From NCBI GenBank assembly GCA_965240325.2, contig OZ251230.1, forward strand, positions 1,302,001 to 1,366,000: a DNA stretch of 64,000 nucleotides, written 5' to 3'. The notes below the pieces were generated by a model. That model was not told where the DNA came from and did not search any database. It saw only the letters and a list, made by a program, of their open reading frames with translations. This DNA comes from Rebecca billardiae RCC1528. Taxonomy: Eukaryota; Protista; Haptophyta. Below are positions 12,432 through 55,020 of the stretch, in pieces (within the stretch, counting starts at the first letter, position 1; every line of letters starts with the position of its first letter). Made by a program: the position numbers and the translations under genes.

Positions 12432-13448
12432 TCAGCCGCCAGCGGAGCAGACCACGCCACCGCTCCTCGGCGCGCCGGCCTTGGCTGTCGCCACATCCAC
12501 CACATCATCCGCCCTGGGGCTGGCGTCATCGGCTGCAGCTCCCCAGTCCGCGTCACTCAGCTCCACGTTGTGGAAGTCGACAAGTCCCGAGGTGATCTCG
12601 TAGAAGGCGCCTACGACCAAAAGCTCCCCTGCATCCACCTTCGCCTTGAGCCGCTCGTCGCTCAGGATCCCCCGCACCTGCGCCATCGTGTTGACGGTGA
12701 CGGCCTCGCGGTCGCGCGCGCGCGCGTCGGAGAGGTTCTTGAGCGCGGCCATCGACGGCTCGAGGTCCGCCTTCATGCCCTGGAGCATCTCGCGCAGGTG
12801 CGGCGGCTCGTTTTGGATGACGTCGTCGTCCAGCTGCGCCGCCTTCACCGCGCCGCATCCCTCGTGCCCGAGCACGACGACCAGCTTGATCTCGAGGTGG
12901 TGAACCGCGTAGTCGATCGAGGCCGCGACCGTGGACTTGTGCAGGTTGCCCGCGACGCGGATGGCGAAGACGTCGCCGAGGCCCTGGTCGAAGACGATCT
13001 CGATGGGCACGCGACTGTCTGCGCAGCCGAGCACGGCCACCTTGGGCGCCTGCTGCAGGATCAGGGCGCGGCGCTCCATGGCGTTCAGCTCTGGACGCAC
13101 GGCTGTGCCAGTCCAGAACCGCGCGTTGCCCGCCTTGAGCTCAGCGAGGATCTCGAGGGGGGGCTTGGCTCGCACGTGACTGTCACGTGTCTGGCGCATC
13201 TTCACGATCTCCTCCATGCTTGGCGCGTCCATTCGCAGCTGGCTCGGGTTGCTCGCCAGGCGCTCCAACTCCTGCCGGTGCGAGGTCTTTCGCTTGACTG
13301 GCGGTGCCGCGGGGCTGTGCTCCGCGTCGGTGCGCTGGGCTACAGTGCGCGCATGAGCCGAGCGAGACGATCGAAAGAAGAAGAAGACGTTCAGCGCAGT
13401 CGAGACCACCGCAGTGGCGAGGAGTGCACCCTCCGTAGTCGAGATCAT
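12432..13448 (-). CDS. Beta-class carbonic anhydrase with N-terminal hydrophobic anchor
   Basis: Zn ligand motifs GCADSRVP and GHEGCGAV; FAIRVAGN; ATG 13448 followed by ALLATAVVSTALNVFFFF. Confidence 0.95.
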   Translation of the reverse strand: MISTTEGALLATAVVSTALNVFFFFRSSRSAHARTVAQRTDAEHSPAAPPVKRKTSHRQELERLASNPSQLRMDAPSMEEIVKMRQTRDSHVRAKPPLEILAELKAGNARFWTGTAVRPELNAMERRALILQQAPKVAVLGCADSRVPIEIVFDQGLGDVFAIRVAGNLHKSTVAASIDYAVHHLEIKLVVVLGHEGCGAVKAAQLDDDVIQNEPPHLREMLQGMKADLEPSMAALKNLSDARARDREAVTVNTMAQVRGILSDERLKAKVDAGELLVVGAFYEITSGLVDFHNVELSDADWGAAADDASPRADDVVDVATAKAGAPRSGGVVCSAGG

Positions 13449-13902
13449 GGTGCGCTTGGACCGCTTGGACGGCACGTGCGCCGTCGTTCTCGGACTCGGC
13501 CGACGCTCGCGCCGAACGCTGGAAAGCGGAAGGAAGGGAAATCTCCAGGCGTCTGAAGTTTGAGTAACTCCAGTACTCGCGACGAAACCGTAGAGTACTG
13601 CACCGGCAGGGGCAGGTCCTTGGCCTCGCGGCTTGCCGCCGCCGCCGCCGCGCGCCCGCCGCCCCAGTGAATCAGATGAGATCGATGAGCGCGCGGCCCC
13701 CAAGTTCTAACAAGGTCTAGTTCTAAGGATGTCCGTGATGCATGCAGCACGGCCCAGTGAAGCCCGAACGATGAAGTCAGCTCATAGAGCGCGAGCCGCT
13801 TCCAGCGGGGCCGGGGTCCTCCCGGTCGACCGCCGCGGCGGCCCTATCAGCCCACGCGGAGTCCTCCTACGCGCCGCCGGGCACGGCGAGCCCGGAGCGG
13901 CA

Positions 13903-16119
13903 TCAGCGCGAGCGGCGGGCCTTCTTGGTGGCTGGCGCCGCGCCGCCGTTCGCTGCATCCCCTCCGGCCGCAGGCTTGGCGCCGCGGCGCTGCTTCACCG
14001 CGGCGGCCAGCTCGTCGAGCGCCTTCCGCGTCGCGTCCCAGTCCACGCACGGGTCGGTGATCGACACGCCGTGCTTGAGGCCCTTCAGCCCGGTGGCGGC
14101 GCTCGACTCGTCGAGCGGCGGCACCGGCTGCGCGCCCGCGGCGAGGAACGACTTGAGCACCACGCCCGACACCGCCATGCTCCCGCCCGCCACGCGCTCG
14201 GCGACGCGCTTGACCGCGCCCAGCTGGTCGGCGTCCGCCGAGCAGTCGACGACCATCGACGGCGGCAGCCCGGCCGCGGTGAGCTGCGCGACCATCGCGT
14301 CGACGTGCGCGTCACCCTCGACGATTGCATGGCAGTCGTCGTTGCCCGTGGTGTGCACGACGCCCGCGACGCCCTGCTTGGACACGCCGATGAACGGGTG
14401 CGAGCGCGCGGCGGCGAGGATCGCATCCACCGCCGCGGCGCCTCCCGCCGCGCTCGGCGCCTCAAACCCCACCGGCATCGACAGGCCTGAGGCGAGCTCG
14501 CGGTGCAGCTTGGACTGCGCCGAGCGCGAGCCGATCTGCGCCCACGAGACGAGGTCGGCGAGGTACTGCGGGATGGTGGTGTCGGCGAACTCGCACGCGA
14601 CGGGCAGGCCGAGCTGGTTCACGGCCTGCAGCAGCTCGCGCGCGGTGTGCAGCCCTTTGTTCACGTTCAGCGAGCCGTCAATGTCCGGGTCCATCACGAG
14701 GCCCGTCCACGCCGACGCTTCGGGCGCGGCGTATGCGCACCGCAGCAGCACGAGGAGCTCGCCAGCGTGCGCCTTGGCCGCGTCGGCGAGCCGCGCGGCG
14801 TACTGCAGCGTGGCGTCGACGTCGTGCAGCGTGCACGGGCCCACGACCACGAGCATCCGCGCGGCGCTCGCGCCGCCCTTGGCCTTGGCGCCGCCGCGCA
14901 CGAGCTGCTGCACGCCCTTGCGCGTCGCGGTGACGAGCGAGGCCACGTGCCCCGAGTGCGGCAGCTCCTCCTGCAGGCACGCGGCGGGGACGATGGCCTG
15001 CACGCCGCGGATGCGCAGGTTGTCGGTGGGGAGCTGCGTGTTCGACTCGCGGAACAGCGTGCTCGCCGGCTCAGCCGCCGCGCTGCTCGTCGCCGTCGGC
15101 TTTGCGTCGGGCGTCGCGCGCCGCCGCTTGACCGCATCGGCGAGCGCGCTGAGCGACGTGAGCGTGTCCGACCAGTCGAGGCACGCGCCGGCGATGGACA
15201 TGCCGGCGACGAGCTCACGCGGCGAGGAGCCGGCGCCGACGGGGGGCGGCTGCGCGCCGGAGACGAGGAACGACTTGAGCACCACGCCCGACACCGCCAT
15301 GCTCCCGCCCGCCACGCGCTCGGCGACGCGCTTGACCGCGCCCAGCTGGTCGGCGTCCGCCGAGCAGTCGACGACCATCGACGGCGGCAGCCCGGCCGCG
15401 GTGAGCTGCGCGACCATCGCGTCGATGTGCGCGTCGCCCGCGACGGTGGCGTGGCAGTCGCGGTTGCCCGTGGTGTGCACGACGCCCGCGACGCCCTGCT
15501 TGGACACGCCGATGAACGGGTGCGAGCGCGCGGCGGCGAGGATGGCGCCCGACGCATCGCCGAGCGTGCCGCCCGCGGCCGTGCTCGCCGCGAAGCCGAC
15601 GGGCATCGAGAGGCCCGAGGCGAGCTCGCGGTGCTGCCGAGAGGCCGAGCCGACCTGGCCCCAGGAGACGAGGTCCGCGATGTACTGCGGCACGATCGCG
15701 TCGGCGAACTCGCAGCCGACGGGCACGCCGGCACCGTTGACCGCGAGGAGCAACGAGCGGATCGCGCGCAGCCCCTTGTTGATCTTGAGCGAGCCGTCGA
15801 GCTCGGGGTCCATGACGAGGCCGCGCCACTCGGAGCTGTCTGGTGCGGCGTAGCTGCAGCGCATGAGGATGACGAGCTCCTCCGCGTGCGCCTTCGCCGC
15901 CTCGGCGAGCCGGCGCGCGTACTCGAGCGTCGACTCAGCGTCGTGTATGGTGCACGGGCCAACGACGACGAGCAGTTTGTGGCCGTGCGAGCGCACGGCC
16001 TCGCGGCCGGCGAGAACGGTGGCCGCCGCCTCCTGCGTGTACGGCGAGCCCTCGATCACGCATGATGCCGGCAGCAGCGGGCGCAGCTCCGCGACACGGC
16101 CGTCCTCGAGCGCCGACAT
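13903..16119 (-). CDS. Tandem two-domain class I-alpha DAHP synthase homologue, probably catalytically inactive
   Basis: Two copies of VVVGPCT(I/L)HD, W.GLVMDP..DGSL..NKGL, EFAD...PQY.ADLVSW, HRELASGLSMPVGF, HTTGN.DCH, G.SI...C.DW; catalytic KPRT, GFKN, LRGG, SHANS and ES motifs altered. Confidence 0.9.
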   Translation of the reverse strand: MSALEDGRVAELRPLLPASCVIEGSPYTQEAAATVLAGREAVRSHGHKLLVVVGPCTIHDAESTLEYARRLAEAAKAHAEELVILMRCSYAAPDSSEWRGLVMDPELDGSLKINKGLRAIRSLLLAVNGAGVPVGCEFADAIVPQYIADLVSWGQVGSASRQHRELASGLSMPVGFAASTAAGGTLGDASGAILAAARSHPFIGVSKQGVAGVVHTTGNRDCHATVAGDAHIDAMVAQLTAAGLPPSMVVDCSADADQLGAVKRVAERVAGGSMAVSGVVLKSFLVSGAQPPPVGAGSSPRELVAGMSIAGACLDWSDTLTSLSALADAVKRRRATPDAKPTATSSAAAEPASTLFRESNTQLPTDNLRIRGVQAIVPAACLQEELPHSGHVASLVTATRKGVQQLVRGGAKAKGGASAARMLVVVGPCTLHDVDATLQYAARLADAAKAHAGELLVLLRCAYAAPEASAWTGLVMDPDIDGSLNVNKGLHTARELLQAVNQLGLPVACEFADTTIPQYLADLVSWAQIGSRSAQSKLHRELASGLSMPVGFEAPSAAGGAAAVDAILAAARSHPFIGVSKQGVAGVVHTTGNDDCHAIVEGDAHVDAMVAQLTAAGLPPSMVVDCSADADQLGAVKRVAERVAGGSMAVSGVVLKSFLAAGAQPVPPLDESSAATGLKGLKHGVSITDPCVDWDATRKALDELAAAVKQRRGAKPAAGGDAANGGAAPATKKARRSR
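14142..15543. repeat. Internal 280-bp near-identical direct repeat (14142-14421 and 15264-15543)
   Basis: Offset 1122 bp; differences confined to a short central patch. Confidence 0.92.
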
Positions 16120-16593: not shown

Positions 16594-17629
16594 ATGTTGG
16601 GCGCGCGGACGGAAGGCAGGGGTGACGCGAGCGCCGCGGAGGGCGCGCCGGCGGCGATGCACCCCGAGCTCGCGACAGCAGCGGCGGCCCACGCGTTGCA
16701 GCCCGCGCCGGCTGCGGGCGCGTCGCGCGCCGGCCAGCGGCCGGTCACTCCGCCCGGGCTGGGCGCCGTGCGCTCCCTCCAGGCGCGCGAGCTCGACAGC
16801 CAAAAGTTCATGCGCTTCCTGCGGCAGAACGCCATGGCGGCGACCAAGCGCATGCCGCGCAACTCGAACGCGCGCTTGCACCTCGCGCTCATCCTGCACC
16901 GCCTCGGCGACGTGTCGCGCGCGCACGTGGAATACCAGCGCGCGCTCGAGTGCGCAAAGTCGTGGCTCATCATGTACCCGACGGGCGAGCCAATCCGGCA
17001 CAACCCGCGCACGCAGTCCTTCTGCGCGCGCGTCGCCGACCACATCGTGCGCGTCGGCGTGGAGATCCAGGGCGACCGCTTCGACCCGGCGTCGACGCTG
17101 GCGGGCATGCTGGACGCCATCAAGTGGTCGTCCGAGCTGCCGCACCTGTGGAACAACCTGGGGCTGATGCACCTGCAGGCGGGCGAGTTCCACGCGGCGC
17201 GGCTGGTGTTCGAGAGCGTCGTCGCCAAGTGGCCCGGCTACGTCGACGCGATGAACAACCTCGCCATCGCGCTGCACGGCGTCGGCCGCTCCGAGGAGGC
17301 GGTGCGCTGCCTGCAGGCGATCGTCCGCATGACGCGCTCGCACCTCGAGGCGTTCAACAACTACGCGTGCGTGCTGGTCGAGGAGCACCGCGACCCGTGG
17401 CTCGCGGTCGCGATCCTGCGCTCCGCCCTCGAGTGGGACGTCACCCAGCCCGCGCTCTGGTCCAACCTCGCCGTCGCGTACTCGCGGCTCGGCCGCGGTG
17501 ACGAGGCGTGCGCGTGCCTCTCGCGCGCGTGCGAGCTCGCGCCCGAGTGGGAGGCGATCTGGCTGAACGCGGCGTCGATCCTGGTGCAGCAGCCCGAGTC
17601 GGCGCGCCGCGCGTCGACCTTCTCCGTCT

Positions 17630-17664
<35 letters not shown>

Positions 17665-19469
17665 TTCTCCGCCGAGTCGATGCCCGCGTCGGGCGCGGTG
17701 CGCGCGGGCGCGTCCGACCCGTCAGAGCTCGCCTCGCTCATCTCGTCCATGTCCGCGTCGGGCGCGCGCGGGCGCTCGTGCCTCAAGGCGGAGGAGGTGG
17801 AGGCGCGGATCGAGGCGCAGGCGGACATCCTCCCCGACGCGCGCGCGTGGGCCGCCCTCGCCTCCGCGCGCATGCGCCGGTACGAGGCCGGCGTGAACGA
17901 CACCCCGCTCTCGACTTGGCACGACCTGCACGACGACATCCTCAAGGCCGCGGCAAAGGCGCTCTCGATCGACGACGGGAACGTGGCGGCGTGGATGCAG
18001 CTCGGGCTGTGCGCGCTGCACGACGGGCTGCACTCGAAGGCGCAGGTGCGCGCGCCGCGCCGCCGCAGCGGAGGGCGGCGCTGGCGCCGGCGCGCGAGCG
18101 CCGCGGCAGCGCTGGCCGTGCCGCGTGCGCGTGTGCACGCGCGCTGCCCTGCCGGCGCAACTGGCGCGCGCGCGACGCGTGCGCGTGCGGCGCACGCTCG
18201 CGCTCATGCTCGCGGCCGCGCCCCCGTGCGCCCGTCGGCTCCGCGCGCGCGGCGCGCAGGGCTACTTCCTGCAGGCGCTGAGCGACCAGCCCAAGCTCGT
18301 CGCCGGCTGGTGCAACCTCGGGATGGCCCTCCAGCTGGGCGGACAGCCGGACGAGGCGCGCGATGCGTACCGGCGCGGGCTGGAGCTCAACCCGCACTCG
18401 GCGCAGCTGCTGAACAACCTGGGCAACCTGCACCGGCAGTGCGGCGAGTGGGCCAAGGTGCGCGCGGCGCGGTGTACGCGCGCGTGCGTGCGCGTGCGCG
18501 TGTGCGTGCGCGCGCGTGCGCGTGCATGTGCGTGTGCTGTCCTGCGAGCGCCACGCCGCCGGCGCACGCAGTCTGACGCCCGGCTGCTGCGGGGCCCACG
18601 CGCCGCCCCGCTGCGTCCGTCCACAGGCGGAGGCGTGCTACCTGCGCGCGCTCAGCACGCGCGGAGACGACGCGCGCGTGCACAACAACCTCGGCCTGCT
18701 GTACATCGCGACCAACCACCTCAGCCGCGCGGCGCAGTGCTTCGCGCGCGCCGTCGAGTCTGACCCGGGCCTCGAGTGCGCAGCCTCCAACCGTCAGCGG
18801 CTTGAGAAGCTCCGCAAAGACATGCGCTCGGGCAGCGCGGGCCGGAGGCGGCACGGCGGCGTGCCGCCGCACTACCGCGCGCCGCACCTCAGCTCGGGCC
18901 GAGCCGGCGGCGCGGGCGGGAGCGGCTCGCGCGGTGCGCGCCGCCCGCTCGGCTCGGACGCCGTCGGCGAGGACGATGGCGCGGCCGCTGCTGGCAGCGC
19001 CCACGGCGCTGACGGCGCGCGCGCGGGCGGCAGCCCGGTGCCGGACGGAGCGGGCGGCAGCGAGGCCGGGGCGGAGGTGGAGGACGGCACCGATGGCGGG
19101 AGCGACAGCCGTAGCCCGCAGAGCGGGCGCGGGCGCGGTCGAGGGCGCGGCCGCGGCCGCGGGCGCGGCCGAGGGCGCGGCCGCTGGGCGAGTGCGAGCG
19201 CGGCGCGGAAGCTGCCGGCATCCGCGCGCGCCATCAGCGAGACAGAGTCCGGGCAGGGCAGCGGGTTTGCGGCCGATGGCGGCAGCACGCCGCCGGGCGC
19301 CGACGCGGCGCAGTCCGCGCCCAATGACGAGCGCATGAACGGCGCGGGCGAGGAGCCAAACGCCCCGGACAGCGGGAAGGACAAAGACGGCGGTGGCGGC
19401 AGTGCCCTCGGCCGCGGCCATCGCCGCCCTGTCGCAAAGCGCGTGTTCGACGACGAGTGGCGGTGGTGA
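16594..19469 (+). CDS. TPR-repeat protein with C-terminal RG tract; exons 16594-18045, 18260-18457, 18627-19469
   Basis: Repeated WNNLG / MNNLA / WSNLA / WCNLG / HNNLG TPR motifs; two GT-AG introns give in-frame joins; (GR)10 at 19125-19184. Confidence 0.88.
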
Positions 19470-50790: not shown

Positions 50791-53700
50791 CTAACTTTGG
50801 TGTCGCCGGTTGCTCTGCGCCAATGGCATGCCGGAGAGCGCTGCCACCGCGGGCCCCGCTCCTGCTCCGGGCACCCCTCCAGAGGGTGCGAGCGCGAGCA
50901 CCGCTGCGGGCAGGCGGGGTGCGGCAGCGCCGTACGCCTTGGCCGTCGCATCCGCACTGCGGCTCGAGCACGTCGGCCCCGCTGCCCGCCGCGCCTGCAG
51001 GCTGGGCGCGGCGTGCGCGCCGCACGGCTGGGCGGGGAGCGGACCAGCTGCCGACGCCGGCGCCGCCGCCGCCGCGGCCACGGGTACCGCTGGCCTTGGC
51101 GCACGATGCGCGCCCGCCGCGTACTGTGCCGCGCGCCTGTGCGCGTGCGCGGTGGAGGCCGCTGCAGCCGCAGGCGGCGGCGGCGTGCGTGGCGCGACGA
51201 GCTGTAGAGCTGCCAGCTGCTGCAGCCGCTCATGAAGCTGCGCCCTTGGGCTCTGGACAGCCCCCATGGCGGATCCGGCCCCCGCCGCCGCCGCCGAGCA
51301 CGCTCGGAGCACGCGCGAGCGCGCCGCCGGCGTGCTGAACGCCGAGTCGGCCTCCGCCTCAGCCTCGGGGCCGAGCCCTTCTTGCGATTCCGAGGCCGCG
51401 GCGCGCTCGGCGGCGGCAGCGCCCGCGGCGCGCTCGCCCGCGGCGCCCTCAGGCGTGGCCATGGCGGCGGTGGCCGCTGCCGGCGGCAGCGCCGTCCCTG
51501 CGAGCGCGCCGTGGGAGGACCGGTGCAACCGCTGTGCGGCGGCTGCAGGCATCGCACCGCGGGGCGGCGAGGCCGCGTCAGCGGCGTCGGTGGCGCCAGC
51601 GGCGTCGGCTGTGCCGCAATGCGCCGCGCCCGCTCGCCACGCCGAAGTCGGCGAGGGCAGCGTCGGCGGCGCCACCCCACCCGGCGGCGGCGGCGGCGCG
51701 CGCTGCGCCGCCGCCTCCGCCTCGGCCGCGGCCGTGGCGGCGGCTGGCGGCGCCGGTCTCGATCGGAGCTCGACCAGCACGGACAGCTCGGCCTCGAGCT
51801 GGACGATGCGCGCGTGCAGCGCGGCGCGCTCGTCGACGGCCGCGAGCGCGTCCGCCTCGCGCGCCGCGTCGCTCGCCGCGCGCGCCGCCTCGGCCTGCGC
51901 CAGAGCCGCCGCCGCGGCCGCGTGCTCGGCGGCGGCAGCGTCCGCGGCCGCGCTGGCATCGGCCGCGCCGCGCAGCGCGCTGGCGAGCTGAGAGCGGAGT
52001 GAGTCCGCCTCGGCGCTGAGCGACTCGTCCAGCTCGTCGGCGCGCGCGCGCGCCTCGCGCACCTCGCGCGCGCTCGCCTCCTCCGCCGCCGCGGCGCGCG
52101 CCGCCGCCGCCGCCTCGGCCTGCGCCGCGCGCGCGCGCAACGCCTCCTCCGAAGTGGCGCGCTGCCGTTGCGCCAGGGCGCGCTCGGCGGCGCGCTCGTC
52201 CTCGGCGGCGCGAAGCTGGGCGCGGAGCGCGTCGCACGCGCGCTCGAGCTGCTCCGCGCGCTCCTGCGCCGCCGCGGCCGCCGTCGCGTGCGCGCCCAGC
52301 TGCGCCGCGAGCGCGGGCGCGCGCTCAGCCGCGTCGGCCGCCGCGCGCGCCGCGCCGTCCGCCGCGGCCGCGGCCGCGCTGCCGAGCGCATCCGCGGCGC
52401 GCTGCGCCTCCGCGAGCTGCGTCGCGAGCGGCGCGGCGGCGTCGAAGGCGGCGAGCGCGGCGCGCTCGGCGGCGAGCCGCCCGGCCGTCGCCGCGTCGCG
52501 CTCCGCGCGCGCCTCAACGCACGCCGCCTCGGCGCGCGCCGCGTCCGCGTCGCGCGCCGCCAGCGCCGCGACGGCTTCATGTGCGGCGCGCGCGGCGACG
52601 GCTGCGGCGGCGCGCAGCTCCGCGGCCGCGGCCTCGGCGGCCTTGGCGCGCTGGTCGGCCTCGCGCTCGGCGTCGGCCGCGCCGCGCGCGCGCGCCTCCG
52701 CCGCCGCGACGCCCTCCGAGCGCGCGCGCTCCGCCGCCGCCGCGCGCGTCTCCGCCGCCTCCGCCTCCGCGCGCGCCGCCGCCTCGGCCGCGCGCGCGCG
52801 ATCCGCCGCGGCGTCGGCCGCCGCGCACGCCATGCGCGCCGACGCCGCGTCGTGCGCGGCGGTCTCGGCGAGGGCGTGGGCGCGGGTGCGCTCGGCCGCG
52901 GCGGTGGAGAGCGCGTCCGACGCCGCCGCGGCGCGCGCCTCCGCCTCCACCGCGCGCTGCTCCGCCTCGAGCGCGCGCCGCTCGGCCGCGGCCGCGCGCG
53001 CCTCAGACGCGGCCGCGGCCGCGGCCGCGCGCGCCGCGCGCGCGGCCGTGGCTTCGGCCTCCTCCTCGGCGGCGAGGCGCGCGGCGAGCGCGGCGGCGGC
53101 GTCGGCCTCGGCGTGCGCGACCTCCGCCTGCGCCGCCGCCGCGCTCGCCTCCGCCCCCGCCCTCGCCTCCGCCGCGCCGCGCGCCTCCGCCTCCAAGTCG
53201 GCCGCGCGCGCCGCCCATAGCCCGTGCTCAAGAGAGGCCTGTCGCTGAGACTCGTGCGCACCTGCCTGGGTGTCCTCTGCGGCGCGGAGGGACTCGGCGG
53301 CGCGCGCGCGCGCGTCGGCGGCGGCGGCGGCGTGTGCGGACGCCTCGGTGCGCCACGCCTCCGCCTCGCTCCGGGCGTCCGCCGCCTCCGCCGCCGCCGC
53401 CGCCGCCGCCGCCTCCGCGGCGGCCGCGCGGCCGTCGGCACGCGCGCCGTCCGCGGCCGCCGCCTCCGCGCGCGCGCTCGCGTGCGCCGCCGCTCGGACC
53501 GCCGCGCTCTCGCCCTCGCGGGCGGAGGCCGCGTCGGCGCGCGCCCGGCGCGTCGCGCCCTCGAGCCGCCCCACCTCCGCGTCCGCGTCCGCCAGCGCAT
53601 CCCGCACGCACCCCACCGCCACCAGCGCCGCCGAGCGCTGATCGAGCGCGCTCGCCGCCGCCGCCTCCGCGGCGCGCGTGTCGGCATGCAACGCACTCAG

Positions 53701-55020
53701 CCGCGCGCCGAGCACGCGCGCCGCCTCGTCGCGCCGGGCGTCGGCGGCGTCGGCGAGCGCGTCGGCGCGCGCGCGCGCCTCGGTCGCCTCGCGCTCGCGC
53801 GCGCTGCTCGCCGCCGCCTCCTCCAGCGCGCGCCGCGCCACGCCCCGCGCCCGCTGCTCCAAGCGCTCGGACTCGCCGAGCGAGCCAAGCGCGCACGCGC
53901 GCTCGGCGCGCGTGCGCGCGTGCGCCGCGCGCTCGGCGGTGAGCGCGCGCGCGACGTGGAGCGCGGCGTCGCGCGAGGCGTCCGCGTCCTCGAGCGCGCC
54001 GCGCAGCGCGTCGCGCTCCACGCACGCGCCGAGCCCGCGCGCCGCGCTCTCCTGCGCCCGCTGAAGCTGGAGCCTTAGGCTGTCAGCGTCTGCGCGCGCG
54101 GACGCGGCGTCGGCGCGCACGCGCGTGCGCTCCGCGCGCGCAGACGCGTCGGCGTCGGCGGCGCGGCCGAGCTCGCGCTCGGCCGCGTCCGCCACGCTCC
54201 GCGCCGCCTGCGCGCGCCGCCGCGCCTCGCCCAGCTCCGCCTCCGCCGCGCTCAGCTCGTCGCGCACAGCGCTGAGCTCGGCGCGAGCGCGCGAGGCCGC
54301 GCCCACGCCCGTGGCGCCGGCCGCGCGCGCGCGCGCCGCGTCCGCCTCGGCGCGCTCGCGGGCGAGGCGCTCCTCCTCGAGCGCGTCGAGCAGCGCATCC
54401 CGCTCCTCGGACGCCCGCGCCTCCAGCTCGGCGTGCGCGCCGCGTGCACTGCGCGCCTCGTCCCGCGCCGCGCGCGCAGAGGCATCTGCGCTCGCGGCTG
54501 CGCGGCGCGCCTCGCCCACCGCGGCGGCGGCGCGTGCGGCCGCCTGCTCGACGAGCGGCAGCGCGTCAGCAGGCAGCCCGAGCTCCGCAGCACGCGCAGG
54601 GAGGGCCCTGCGCAGCGCCTCGAGCTGCGCGCGCAGCTGATCGGCCTGCGCGTCGCTGGCTGCCTTGGCCGCCTGCGCCGACTCGATCGCAGCCTGCAGC
54701 GCCGCGAACCGGCGCCGAGAGGCCTCGCGCGCCGTGGAAGCGCGCCCGCCGATGCCTGCGTGCTCGGCCGATCCGACGAGCTTCTCCAGCCCATCGGACG
54801 CGAGCGAGGCCAGCTCCGCCTGCAGGTGCTCCGCGCGGCGCTCGGCCTCGCGACGAGCGCGCCGGTGCTGCTCGCCCGCCGCGCGCGCGGCCGTGAGCGC
54901 ATCGCGGGTCGAGCCGAGCTGCAGCTCGGCATCAGCGAGGCGGCGCGGTAGCGCGTGGACGTCCGCCGCCTCGCGCTGTGCTCGACGCACCGCCGCCCCC
55001 GCGGCGCCCGCCGTGCTCAT
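50791..55020 (-). CDS. Very long Ala/Glu/Arg-rich coiled-coil protein
   Basis: About 1400 codons open from ATG 55020; helical A/E/R/L composition, unlike the Arg/Pro shadow frames. Confidence 0.75.
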   Translation of the reverse strand: MSTAGAAGAAVRRAQREAADVHALPRRLADAELQLGSTRDALTAARAAGEQHRRARREAERRAEHLQAELASLASDGLEKLVGSAEHAGIGGRASTAREASRRRFAALQAAIESAQAAKAASDAQADQLRAQLEALRRALPARAAELGLPADALPLVEQAAARAAAAVGEARRAAASADASARAARDEARSARGAHAELEARASEERDALLDALEEERLARERAEADAARARAAGATGVGAASRARAELSAVRDELSAAEAELGEARRRAQAARSVADAAERELGRAADADASARAERTRVRADAASARADADSLRLQLQRAQESAARGLGACVERDALRGALEDADASRDAALHVARALTAERAAHARTRAERACALGSLGESERLEQRARGVARRALEEAAASSAREREATEARARADALADAADARRDEAARVLGARLSALHADTRAAEAAAASALDQRSAALVAVGCVRDALADADAEVGRLEGATRRARADAASAREGESAAVRAAAHASARAEAAAADGARADGRAAAAEAAAAAAAAEAADARSEAEAWRTEASAHAAAAADARARAAESLRAAEDTQAGAHESQRQASLEHGLWAARAADLEAEARGAAEARAGAEASAAAAQAEVAHAEADAAAALAARLAAEEEAEATAARAARAAAAAAASEARAAAAERRALEAEQRAVEAEARAAAASDALSTAAAERTRAHALAETAAHDAASARMACAAADAAADRARAAEAAARAEAEAAETRAAAAERARSEGVAAAEARARGAADAEREADQRAKAAEAAAAELRAAAAVAARAAHEAVAALAARDADAARAEAACVEARAERDAATAGRLAAERAALAAFDAAAPLATQLAEAQRAADALGSAAAAAADGAARAAADAAERAPALAAQLGAHATAAAAAQERAEQLERACDALRAQLRAAEDERAAERALAQRQRATSEEALRARAAQAEAAAAARAAAAEEASAREVREARARADELDESLSAEADSLRSQLASALRGAADASAAADAAAAEHAAAAAALAQAEAARAASDAAREADALAAVDERAALHARIVQLEAELSVLVELRSRPAPPAAATAAAEAEAAAQRAPPPPPGGVAPPTLPSPTSAWRAGAAHCGTADAAGATDAADAASPPRGAMPAAAAQRLHRSSHGALAGTALPPAAATAAMATPEGAAGERAAGAAAAERAAASESQEGLGPEAEAEADSAFSTPAARSRVLRACSAAAAGAGSAMGAVQSPRAQLHERLQQLAALQLVAPRTPPPPAAAAASTAHAHRRAAQYAAGAHRAPRPAVPVAAAAAAPASAAGPLPAQPCGAHAAPSLQARRAAGPTCSSRSADATAKAYGAAAPRLPAAVLALAPSGGVPGAGAGPAVAALSGMPLAQSNRRHQS

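What the first reader, a model, noticed from the sequence alone, without database searches (positions are those of the whole stretch)
13903..16119. Tandem pseudo-DAHP synthase: catalytic site lost, aromatic amino-acid pocket kept
Seen: two AroF/G/H-like barrels in one chain. Against E. coli AroG, both lack EKPRT (AAPDS/AAPEA), K186 (GFA/GFE), R234, the SHANS loop with H268, and E302 (now K); domain 1 also lacks R165 and D326. Both keep the feedback-site positions: N-terminal acidic residue(s), R40, EF.D...PQY.A, LASGLS and PFIGVSK. Gly at the S211 position is the Tyr-sensitive signature of AroF/Aro4. The protein ends in basic KKARRSR and has no obvious plastid leader. Known: the inhibitor site uses residues from two subunits. 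Inference: a single-chain pseudo-dimer repurposed as a Tyr/aromatic amino-acid sensor or as a regulatory partner, possibly nuclear.
Basis: partly seen in the sequence, partly recalled or inferred. Interest (0 to 1): 0.87.

Follow-up and report, generated by a model that had tools for sequence, protein, structure and literature searches.

The report
Dead tandem DAHP synthase, amino-acid pocket kept
A haptophyte alga carries an intact gene for two fused copies of the first enzyme of aromatic amino-acid synthesis in which the catalytic residues are gone but the tyrosine/phenylalanine feedback pocket is perfectly kept, and the same design is conserved across haptophytes, so it most likely acts as an amino-acid-binding sensor rather than as an enzyme.

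Summary
Window 13903-16119 (-) is one uninterrupted 738-codon gene made of two type I-alpha DAHP synthase barrels. Both lack the KPRT loop, K186, R234, H268 and E302. Both keep every feedback-site residue I scored.

It is not a one-off or a decaying copy. It belongs to a family found in three named Pavlovales (two species, one strain), in Prymnesium parvum and in many marine metagenome contigs. I counted 127 pseudo-domains: catalytic residues survive in 1-14% of them, pocket residues in 95-100%. Active enzymes are the reverse at the catalytic sites (about 100%).

The P. parvum ortholog is a spliced, polyadenylated mRNA. Structure prediction gives a compact two-barrel body (pTM 0.79). The N-terminal strand and pocket segments of barrel 1 are confident only when barrel 2 is present, as expected for a single-chain "tight dimer".

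No member has a targeting leader. Nearly all end in a K-K/R-x-K/R tail that looks like a nuclear import signal.

Best reading: a catalytically dead Tyr/Phe-binding receptor, analogous to Gal3 or HisZ; its output is unknown. I found no paper describing it, and databases call it an active synthase. No ligand binding, localisation or expression of this particular gene could be tested. The scan also noted a second tandem pseudo-DAHPS elsewhere in this genome, which I did not check.

The parts
13903..16119 (-). Complete intron-free coding sequence (738 codons plus stop) of the tandem pseudo-DAHP synthase
   Evidence: ORF. End-to-end alignment with Pavlovales orthologs P0001, P0002 and P0262. Two PF00793 domains.
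15109..16119 (-). Barrel 1 (residues 1-337), type I-alpha DAHPS fold. Catalytic residues K97, R99, T100, R165, K186, R234, H268, E302 and D326 are replaced.
15025..15108 (-). Disordered linker (residues 338-365) that runs into the conserved F.E...TDNLRI start of barrel 2
   Evidence: pLDDT below 50 over residues 338-365. Consensus of alignment A1.
13972..15024 (-). Barrel 2 (residues 366-716). K97, R99, T100, K186, R234, H268 and E302 are replaced; C61, R92, R165 and D326 remain.
16069..16107 (-). N-terminal strand of barrel 1 (EDGRVAELRPLLP), the element that completes the partner barrel's feedback pocket in real enzymes
   Evidence: Strand E9-14 with pLDDT 84 in the tandem model. Disordered when barrel 1 is folded alone. 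PMC4735112 describes this element's role in active enzymes.
14986..15027 (-). N-terminal strand of barrel 2 (TDNLRIRGVQAIVP). The D-N signature is shared by the second barrels of the family.
15661..15711 (-). Pocket wall of barrel 1 (EFADAIVPQYIADLVSW; AroG D146, P150, Q151, Y152, A154)
   Evidence: Feedback-resistance mutations D146N and P150L are listed in PMC11843938.
14542..14592 (-). Pocket wall of barrel 2 (EFADTTIPQYLADLVSW)
15592..15624 (-). LASGLSMPVGF of barrel 1 (AroL175, G178, L179, S180 kept; the following K186 is now A)
   Evidence: Mutations L175Q and S180F are listed in PMC11843938.
14464..14496 (-). LASGLSMPVGF of barrel 2 (K186 is now E)
15463..15522 (-). Beta-hairpin of barrel 1 (HPFIGVSKQGVAGVVHTTGN; F209, Gly at 211, V212, K214, V221). 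This segment is more conserved in the pseudo-family than in active enzymes.
14341..14400 (-). Beta-hairpin of barrel 2, the same sequence as in barrel 1
15826..15852 (-). Former KPRT substrate loop of barrel 1, now YAAPDSSEW
   Evidence: The loop varies in length and sequence across the family.
14707..14733 (-). Former KPRT substrate loop of barrel 2, now YAAPEASAW
14125..14424 (.). Gene-conversion tract, copy in barrel 2. It is 96% identical in DNA to 15247-15546 and covers the former R234, H268 and E302 positions.
15247..15546 (.). Gene-conversion tract, copy in barrel 1
13906..13971 (-). Disordered C-terminal tail (residues 717-738) ending in KKARRSR (13906-13926), a K-K/R-x-K/R motif like a nuclear import signal
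   Evidence: pLDDT below 50. The motif is conserved in nearly all complete family members.

Best explanation
The gene encodes a catalytically dead, single-chain 'tight dimer' of type I-alpha DAHP synthase. It has been kept by selection for its two aromatic amino-acid feedback pockets.

Proposed mechanism:
- The two barrels pack against each other as the two subunits of a real enzyme do. The N-terminal strand of each barrel closes the pocket of the other.
- Tyrosine is suggested by Gly at position 211; phenylalanine is possible. The ligand binds between the PQY wall, the GLS loop and the beta-hairpin.
- Binding orders the strand and hairpin, and so changes the surface of the protein.
- There is no active site left to inhibit. 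The conformational change must therefore be read by something else: a partner protein, or the accessibility of the conserved C-terminal K-K/R-x-K/R tail, which looks like a nuclear import signal.
- The protein has no organelle leader, so it sits in the cytosol and/or nucleus.

Shown: domain architecture, loss of catalytic residues, family-wide conservation of the pocket and tail, expression of an ortholog.
Inferred: the intramolecular dimer (from structure prediction), ligand identity, the sensor role, the nuclear link.
For: Fold and homology: (TM 0.91, rmsd 1.7 A to 4HSO/1GG1/1HFB).

Loss of catalysis:
- K97, R99, K186, R234, H268 and E302 are absent in both halves.
- Across 127 pseudo-domains these residues survive in only 1-12%, against 99-100% of 298 active domains.
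- The replacing residues vary freely, and the KPRT loop varies in length.

Selection on the pocket:
- P150 100%, Q151 98%, A154 96%, L179 100%, S180 99%, F209 100%, V221 95%. This is equal to or higher than in active enzymes.
- The hairpin block 211-230 scores 0.76 against 0.66 in active enzymes.
- D146, P150, L175 and S180 are the sites of feedback-resistant AroG mutants that stay active (PMC11843938). Fold stability alone therefore does not explain why they are kept.

Ancient, monophyletic family:
- The pseudo-domains form one side of a branch (support 100, 93).
- Named members are Pavlovales sp. CCMP2436, Diacronema lutheri and Prymnesium parvum.

Expression: L005 is a spliced, polyadenylated mRNA of the P. 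parvum gene.

Pseudo-dimer:
- The full-length model has pTM 0.79 with strands at residues 9-14 and 370-375.
- In barrel 1 folded alone, residues 1-23 fall below pLDDT 50 and residues 141-160 fall to about 52, from 81-86 in the tandem model.
- In real enzymes the tight dimer is the allosteric unit, and the N-terminal extension plus hairpin form the Phe site (PMC4735112).

Tail: the K-K/R-x-K/R motif ends nearly all complete members.
Against: - No binding, activity, localisation or partner data exist.
- No sequencing run was listed for this gene, so its own expression is untested.
- Gene-wide dN/dS among Pavlovales is only moderately low (0.25-0.49). dS is compressed by extreme GC3 bias, so this is an upper bound.
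- Pocket residues are also well conserved in active enzymes. Part of their retention could reflect dimer-interface packing.
- I had no coordinates. The inter-barrel geometry is inferred from confidence scores, not measured.
- The basic tail could serve another purpose, such as a phosphorylation or partner-docking site.
Confidence: 0.62

Rival explanations
1. It is a dedicated regulatory subunit. The pseudo-dimer docks onto an active enzyme of aromatic amino-acid metabolism, such as an active DAHP synthase dimer through the tetramer interface, or chorismate mutase as in the mycobacterial DAHPS-CM complex. This would make that enzyme sensitive to Tyr/Phe, as HisZ does for ATP-phosphoribosyltransferase. 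This is a special case of the sensor idea with a metabolic rather than a nuclear output.
For: - Type I-alpha enzymes are dimers of tight dimers (PMC4735112).
- Catalytically intact tandem DAHP synthases exist in environmental eukaryotes and sit next to the pseudo-clade in the tree (P0389/P0391). A compatible partner could therefore exist.
- DAHPS-chorismate mutase regulatory complexes are documented (PMC7762937 and PMC8408635, listed).
Against: - In type I-alpha enzymes the allosteric signal travels within the tight dimer, not across the weak tetramer interface.
- No active type I-alpha DAHPS from a named haptophyte appeared in my searches.
- One paper places the haptophyte shikimate pathway in the plastid (PMC4301891), whereas this protein has no leader.
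- This reading does not explain the conserved basic C-terminal tail.
Confidence: 0.2
2. The protein is still an enzyme. It would use the remaining barrel (Cys61, Arg92 and, in barrel 2, Arg165 and Asp326) for a different reaction or substrate, so it is a neo-functionalised enzyme and not a pseudoenzyme.
For: - Pavlovales members keep C61 and R92 in both barrels, and the YAAPD(S/A)SEW loop is conserved among them.
- TIM barrels readily evolve new activities (general knowledge).
Against: - Across the family the former active-site positions are not conserved in any new state: C61 14%, R92 50%, and each other position is a mixture of residues.
- The substrate loop varies in length.
- No position shows a family-wide conserved replacement except A219G in the hairpin.
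Confidence: 0.06
3. It has a structural or scaffolding role unrelated to ligand binding. On this reading the pocket residues are kept only because they form the interface that holds the two barrels together.
For: The pocket lies at the tight-dimer interface. The segments that lose confidence in the isolated-barrel model are the same ones.
Against: - Feedback-resistant substitutions at D146, P150, L175 and S180 leave E. coli AroG active, and hence folded and assembled (PMC11843938). The interface therefore tolerates changes that the pseudo-family never shows.
- Position 211 switches only between Ser and Gly, the two states linked to Phe versus Tyr selectivity (PDB 4HSO/4IXX titles).
Confidence: 0.09
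4. It is a decaying duplicate: a pseudogene in the making that stays open only because stop codons are rare in 70% GC DNA.
For: Long spurious ORFs do occur here, for example 642 codons on the opposite strand. Gene-wide dN/dS is not very low.
Against: - Full-length orthologs have the same architecture in both haptophyte classes.
- Many positions are invariant.
- Conservation is strongly site-specific.
- The N-terminus, linker motif and C-terminal tail are conserved.
- A spliced mRNA exists in P. parvum.
Confidence: 0.02

Closest known systems
Type I-alpha DAHP synthases with a feedback site (E. coli AroG/AroF/AroH, yeast Aro3/Aro4, Neisseria meningitidis DAH7PS; PDB 1KFL, 1HFB, 4HSO, 7REU)
   Same: - Same fold (TM 0.91), with 37-47% sequence identity.
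- Same N-terminal extension and beta-hairpin.
- Same feedback-pocket residues, including the Ser/Gly switch position.
- The tight dimer is the allosteric unit.
   Different: - Two barrels in one chain.
- The metal ligands H268 and E302 and the PEP/E4P-binding residues K97, R99, T100, K186 and R234 are gone.
- A conserved basic C-terminal tail.
- No catalytic output is left for the pocket to control.
Catalytically intact tandem DAHP synthases (Lotharella globosa P0088/UniRef A0A7S3YL75; environmental P0389, P0391)
   Same: Two type I-alpha barrels are fused head to tail with a short linker. P0389/P0391 are the nearest active relatives in the tree.
   Different: - All 11 catalytic residues I scored are intact in both barrels.
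- There is no C-terminal K-K/R-x-K/R tail; P0389/P0391 instead carry basic stretches at the N-terminus and in the linker.
- The Lotharella fusion is an independent duplication.
Gal3p of yeast (inactive galactokinase paralog that senses galactose). Comparison from my own knowledge.
   Same: An enzyme paralog that has lost catalysis but keeps the small-molecule site and works as a receptor for the pathway's metabolite.
   Different: - Unrelated fold.
- Gal3 keeps the substrate site, whereas here the allosteric site is kept and the substrate site is lost.
- Gal3's partner (Gal80) is known; no partner is known here.
HisZ (inactive histidyl-tRNA synthetase paralog, regulatory subunit of ATP-phosphoribosyltransferase). 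Comparison from my own knowledge.
   Same: A dead paralog retained to bind the end-product amino acid and pass on feedback information.
   Different: - Unrelated fold.
- HisZ works in a fixed hetero-oligomer with the enzyme it regulates.
- Here the protein appears to be in a different compartment from the pathway.

Membership tests
DAHP synthase type I-alpha (PF00793; TIGR00034 aroFGH) | Sequence and fold homology to the (beta/alpha)8 barrel | tested here: met
   Pfam E = 2.5e-76, two stretches. TIGR00034 scores 521 bits against a cutoff of 173. Foldseek TM 0.91.
DAHP synthase type I-alpha (PF00793; TIGR00034 aroFGH) | Metal-binding tetrad Cys61, His268, Glu302, Asp326 | tested here: not met
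   H268 becomes A and E302 becomes K in both barrels. D326 becomes G in barrel 1. Only C61 is kept, plus D326 in barrel 2.
DAHP synthase type I-alpha (PF00793; TIGR00034 aroFGH) | PEP-binding residues Arg92, Lys97, Arg165, Lys186, Arg234 | tested here: not met
   K97 becomes A, K186 becomes A/E and R234 becomes A/E. R165 is lost in barrel 1. These residues are 99-100% conserved in 298 active domains.
DAHP synthase type I-alpha (PF00793; TIGR00034 aroFGH) | E4P-binding KPRT(T/S) loop | tested here: not met
   The loop reads AAPDS / AAPEA.
DAHP synthase type I-alpha (PF00793; TIGR00034 aroFGH) | Subtype-specific allosteric elements: the N-terminal extension and the beta6a/6b hairpin, with pocket residues | tested here: met
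   All 17 pocket positions I scored are kept. They are conserved family-wide.
DAHP synthase type I-alpha (PF00793; TIGR00034 aroFGH) | DAHP synthase activity | not testable with these tools
   Needs an enzyme assay or complementation. I predict it is absent.
NCBIfam AroG equivalog NF006723 | Score above the curated cutoff | tested here: not met
   521.7 bits against a cutoff of 568, even with two domains summed.
Ligand-sensing pseudoenzymes (Gal3 / HisZ type) | Catalytic residues lost while the protein stays under selection | tested here: met
Ligand-sensing pseudoenzymes (Gal3 / HisZ type) | Ligand-binding site conserved | tested here: met
   By sequence only.
Ligand-sensing pseudoenzymes (Gal3 / HisZ type) | Demonstrated ligand binding and a downstream partner | not testable with these tools
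   Needs ITC or thermal shift, and pull-downs.
Classical monopartite nuclear localisation signal | K-K/R-x-K/R motif in an exposed, disordered segment | tested here: met
   KKARRSR lies in a tail with pLDDT below 50. The motif is conserved in nearly all complete members. The consensus is cited from my own knowledge.
Classical monopartite nuclear localisation signal | Importin-dependent nuclear import | not testable with these tools
   Needs localisation experiments.

The most novel reading that the evidence does not exclude
Haptophytes possess a dedicated aromatic amino-acid receptor built from the feedback site of a dead DAHP synthase. When it binds Tyr or Phe, the conserved C-terminal import signal becomes exposed or hidden, so the protein shuttles to the nucleus and adjusts gene expression. 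Paralogs or lineages would be tuned to different amino acids by the Ser/Gly switch at position 211. This would be a new class of eukaryotic amino-acid sensor, abundant in ocean phytoplankton.
Probability: 0.22. Interest if true: 0.92.

Novelty: new variant of a known kind. Interest (0 to 1): 0.78.

Why it matters
- Direct amino-acid sensors in eukaryotes are few, and I know of none described for tyrosine or phenylalanine in algae. This family offers a concrete, testable candidate in an ecologically dominant phytoplankton group. Its ligand pocket is already understood at atomic level from the parent enzymes.
- It is an unusually clean natural experiment in pseudoenzyme evolution. The active site has decayed, the allosteric site is frozen, and the obligate dimer is hard-wired into one chain.
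- It has practical weight. These proteins are named 3-deoxy-7-phosphoheptulonate synthase (K01626) in UniRef, IMG and Tara annotations. Metabolic reconstructions of haptophytes and ocean metagenomes therefore count an enzyme that is very probably inactive.

Tried and rejected
- Expression of the window gene: two searches for sequencing runs listed none, so read laying could not be used.
- dN/dS: Nei-Gojobori values of 0.25-0.49 among Pavlovales and 0.6-0.77 to P. parvum. They are unreliable because GC3 bias caps synonymous divergence near 0.5. I rely on site-specific conservation instead.
- Age of the internal duplication: the whole-domain tree groups barrels 1 and 2 within each subclade. A tree of the N-terminal 95 columns was too poorly resolved to show one ancestral duplication. 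Conversion tracts in different places in different species explain the pattern. A single origin is suggested only by the shared DD/DN signatures, linker motif and tail.
- An active DAHP synthase in a named haptophyte: none appeared in three protein searches. Type II enzymes could not be queried because no tool gave me such a sequence.
- A second paralog in named Pavlovales (the Ser211 type hinted at by scan note s1-348455): not found.
- Literature: six searches for pseudo, inactive, tandem or haptophyte DAHP synthase found nothing relevant. Two papers requested by PMC id were not held.
- ESM Atlas shape search: it returned only single-barrel bacterial enzymes, so it gave no independent check of the inter-barrel geometry.
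- Gene neighbourhood: the window has a beta-carbonic anhydrase and a TPR protein, CCMP2436 a flavin reductase, and P. parvum a methyltransferase. There is no shared synteny.
Full report
**The sequence**

The window is very GC-rich (0.60-0.85). On the minus strand an ORF runs from 16257 to 13903. Its first in-frame ATG is at 16119, which gives 738 residues beginning MSALEDGRV. Three Pavlovales orthologs start at the same place. One of them sits on a transcript-like contig with 300 nt of 5' leader.

Long ORFs arise by chance in such DNA; there is a 642-codon ORF on the opposite strand. An open frame by itself proves little here. The evidence that this is a gene comes from homology.

**Homology and fold**

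- Pfam finds two DAHP_synth_1 stretches (E = 2.5e-76).
- NCBIfam matches aroFGH. The score stays below the AroG equivalog cutoff even with two domains summed.
- Each half matches solved type I-alpha enzymes at about 1e-70.
- An AlphaFold2 model built on ten family members has mean pLDDT 82 and pTM 0.79. Only the linker (338-365), the C-terminal tail (717-738) and a few short loops are disordered.
- Foldseek places the barrels on Neisseria, E. coli and yeast enzymes with TM 0.91 and rmsd 1.7 A.

I took E. coli AroG from the K-12 record and aligned both halves to it. Every statement holds.

| AroG feature | Barrel 1 | Barrel 2 |
|---|---|---|
| EKPRT loop | AAPDS | AAPEA |
| K186 | A | E |
| R234 | A | E |
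| H268 (SHANS loop, now SADAD) | A | A |
| E302 | K | K |
| R165 | lost | kept |
| D326 | G | kept |
| C61, R92 | kept | kept |

With two of the four metal ligands gone, and the lysines and arginines that hold PEP and E4P also gone, DAHP synthesis is not credible. This rests on established knowledge of the AroG active site.

The following are all kept: the N-terminal acidic pair, R40, D146, P150, Q151, Y152, A154, L175, G178, L179, S180, F209, V212, K214 and V221. Position 211 is Gly in both halves.

**It is a family**

A search with the whole protein found tandem relatives of 700-790 residues:

- Pavlovales sp. CCMP2436 (65% identity).
- An unnamed Pavlovales-like transcript contig (61%).
- Prymnesium parvum (44%).
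- Several environmental sequences.

A cluster look-up added Diacronema lutheri KAG8461047.1 (64% identity). The window therefore comes from yet another member of Pavlovales. Profile and further searches raised the count to 127 pseudo-domains, 76 of them below 90% mutual identity, against 298 active domains. Some clusters have 50-73 members and occur on up to 50 contigs, including Tara Oceans samples.

**The site pattern across the family**

| Site class | Residue | Kept in pseudo-domains | Kept in active domains |
|---|---|---|---|
| Catalytic | K97 | 4% | 99-100% |
| Catalytic | R99 | 3% | 99-100% |
| Catalytic | R234 | 2% | 99-100% |
| Catalytic | H268 | 1% | 99-100% |
| Catalytic | E302 | 2% | 99-100% |
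| Catalytic | C61 | 14% | 99-100% |
| Pocket | P150 | 100% | 90% |
| Pocket | Q151 | 98% | 89% |
| Pocket | A154 | 96% | 73% |
| Pocket | L179 | 100% | 95% |
| Pocket | S180 | 99% | 90% |
| Pocket | F209 | 100% | 94% |
| Pocket | V221 | 95% | 66% |

The replacements at catalytic positions differ from clade to clade. By ten-residue blocks (mean frequency of the commonest residue):

| Block | Pseudo-family | Active enzymes |
|---|---|---|
| KPRT loop | 0.43 | 0.95 |
| GAR loop | 0.42 | 0.94 |
| Hairpin 211-230 | 0.76 | 0.66 |

No former active-site position has settled on a new conserved residue. The only family-wide switch is A219G, in the hairpin.

D146N, P150L, L175Q and S180F are classical feedback-resistant AroG variants that remain active (PMC11843938). 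The fold and the dimer therefore tolerate changes at these positions, yet the pseudo-family never shows any. This is the strongest argument that the pocket itself is what selection preserves.

Position 211 takes only two states:

- Gly in Pavlovales and in one environmental clade.
- Ser in the Prymnesium-type clade.

In the Neisseria enzyme the Ser-to-Gly change is the variant crystallised with tyrosine (PDB 4HSO and 4IXX titles). The link of Gly to Tyr and Ser to Phe in yeast Aro4/Aro3 is from my own knowledge.

**Phylogeny**

All pseudo-domains fall on one side of a branch (SH-aLRT 100, 93). The tandem DAHP synthase of the chlorarachniophyte Lotharella globosa has both barrels fully intact and is an independent fusion.

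Two environmental tandem proteins, P0389 and P0391, are also fully intact. Together with the pseudo-clade they form one side of a well-supported branch (98). The pseudo-family thus probably descends from an active tandem enzyme. The organism that carries those active tandems is unknown.

**Concerted evolution of the two halves**

Within each subclade barrel 1 and barrel 2 group together. This is explained by gene conversion.

- In the window gene, 14125-14424 and 15247-15546 are 96% identical. Third-position identity is 0.9-1.0 over AroG positions about 200-307, against about 0.5 elsewhere.
- CCMP2436 has a different tract (about 94-170) and P. parvum another (about 193-222).
- One environmental member has identical C-terminal halves.

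The losses of R234, H268 and E302 in the two barrels of this gene are consequently one event copied, not two. The loss itself is old and family-wide.

**Is it expressed and selected?**

No sequencing run was listed for this gene. For P. parvum, a 2.8-kb contig ending in a poly(A) run matches the genomic locus in six collinear blocks, one of them in the 5' leader. Five introns are removed, so this is a mature mRNA.

Nei-Gojobori dN/dS among Pavlovales is 0.25-0.49. Because third positions are almost all G or C, synonymous divergence is capped and the ratio is inflated. I treat it as an upper bound.

**Single-chain dimer**

In real type I-alpha enzymes the tight dimer buries about 2800 square angstroms. 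The N-terminal extension and the hairpin contribute to that interface and form the Phe site. The dimer suffices for both catalysis and inhibition (PMC4735112).

Two results from structure prediction fit this arrangement:

- The full-length model has pTM 0.79. That cannot be reached unless the two barrels are placed confidently relative to each other. Strands are predicted at residues 9-14 and 370-375.
- When barrel 1 is folded alone with a comparable alignment, residues 1-23 drop below pLDDT 50 and lose the strand. The PQY wall (residues 141-160) drops from 81-86 to about 52.

These are exactly the parts expected to be completed by the partner barrel. I had no coordinates, so the geometry itself is inferred.

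**Location**

None of the complete family members has a signal or transit peptide. They begin a few residues before the first strand.

Nearly all end, after a variable disordered spacer, in K-K/R-x-K/R. Examples are KKARRSR, KKPRTA, KKQRSA, KKARAA, KKRGRS, PKRPRQE and AKRARSE. This fits the classical monopartite nuclear import consensus (my own knowledge). The active Lotharella tandem lacks such a tail.

One paper describes the shikimate pathway of a haptophyte as plastid-localised (PMC4301891). The pseudoenzyme would then sit in a different compartment from the pathway.

**Interpretation**

The most economical reading is a ligand receptor. It would be a dead enzyme kept for its two Tyr/Phe pockets, hard-wired as a dimer, cytosolic or nuclear, with an output that passes through a partner or through the conserved tail. 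It works like Gal3 or HisZ, but it is not related to them.

Alternative readings:

- A regulatory subunit for an aromatic-pathway enzyme is the main alternative, and is really a sub-case.
- A new catalytic activity is unlikely, because the old active site shows no new conserved state.
- A purely structural role is unlikely, because feedback-resistant mutations are tolerated by the parent fold.
- A decaying duplicate is excluded.

**Novelty**

Six full-text searches found no description of an inactive, tandem or haptophyte-specific DAHP synthase homolog. Sources name these proteins as active synthases.

The scan's own notes list a second tandem pseudo-DAHPS and a shorter DAHPS homolog with replaced substrate residues elsewhere in this genome. 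I could not reach those sequences, so that remains a lead. If the second copy carries Ser at position 211, the genome would hold a Tyr-type and a Phe-type receptor side by side.

Noticed in passing
window 14125-14424 and 15247-15546: A recent intragenic gene-conversion tract between the two barrels: 96% DNA identity, and third-position identity up to 1.0 over AroG positions about 200-307. Orthologs in CCMP2436 and P. parvum have tracts in other places, so the two halves evolve in concert.
   Followed up: yes
P0088 / P0255 (Lotharella globosa); P0389, P0391 (environmental): These are tandem type I-alpha DAHP synthases with all 11 scored catalytic residues intact in both barrels, i.e. natural single-chain dimers that should be active. 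P0389/P0391 are the nearest active relatives of the pseudo-family. They carry basic RKRAR / KKRK stretches at the N-terminus and in the linker.
   Followed up: partly
P0273 (1109 aa, environmental): A family member with three pseudo-DAHPS barrels in one predicted protein (Pfam finds three stretches). It could be a real triplication or an assembly or gene-call artefact.
   Followed up: partly
window 12432-13703 (-): The next ORF downstream of the gene's 3' end, on the same strand, encodes a beta-carbonic anhydrase (Pro_CA, E = 9e-38). It has an N-terminal extension of about 220 residues.
   Followed up: partly
window 16594-18576 (+): A divergently oriented ORF encodes a TPR-repeat protein. Its C-terminal third is low-complexity Ala/Arg-rich sequence that may be read-through.
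   Followed up: partly
window 52001-54000: Extreme composition: GC 0.854 with AT skew -0.29. This is far above the window's average.
   Followed up: no
database records for P0003, P0262, P0469 and relatives: UniRef, IMG and Tara annotations name these proteins 3-deoxy-7-phosphoheptulonate synthase (K01626/COG0722), although the catalytic residues are missing. This is probably a systematic mis-annotation in haptophyte and ocean metagenome data.
   Followed up: partly
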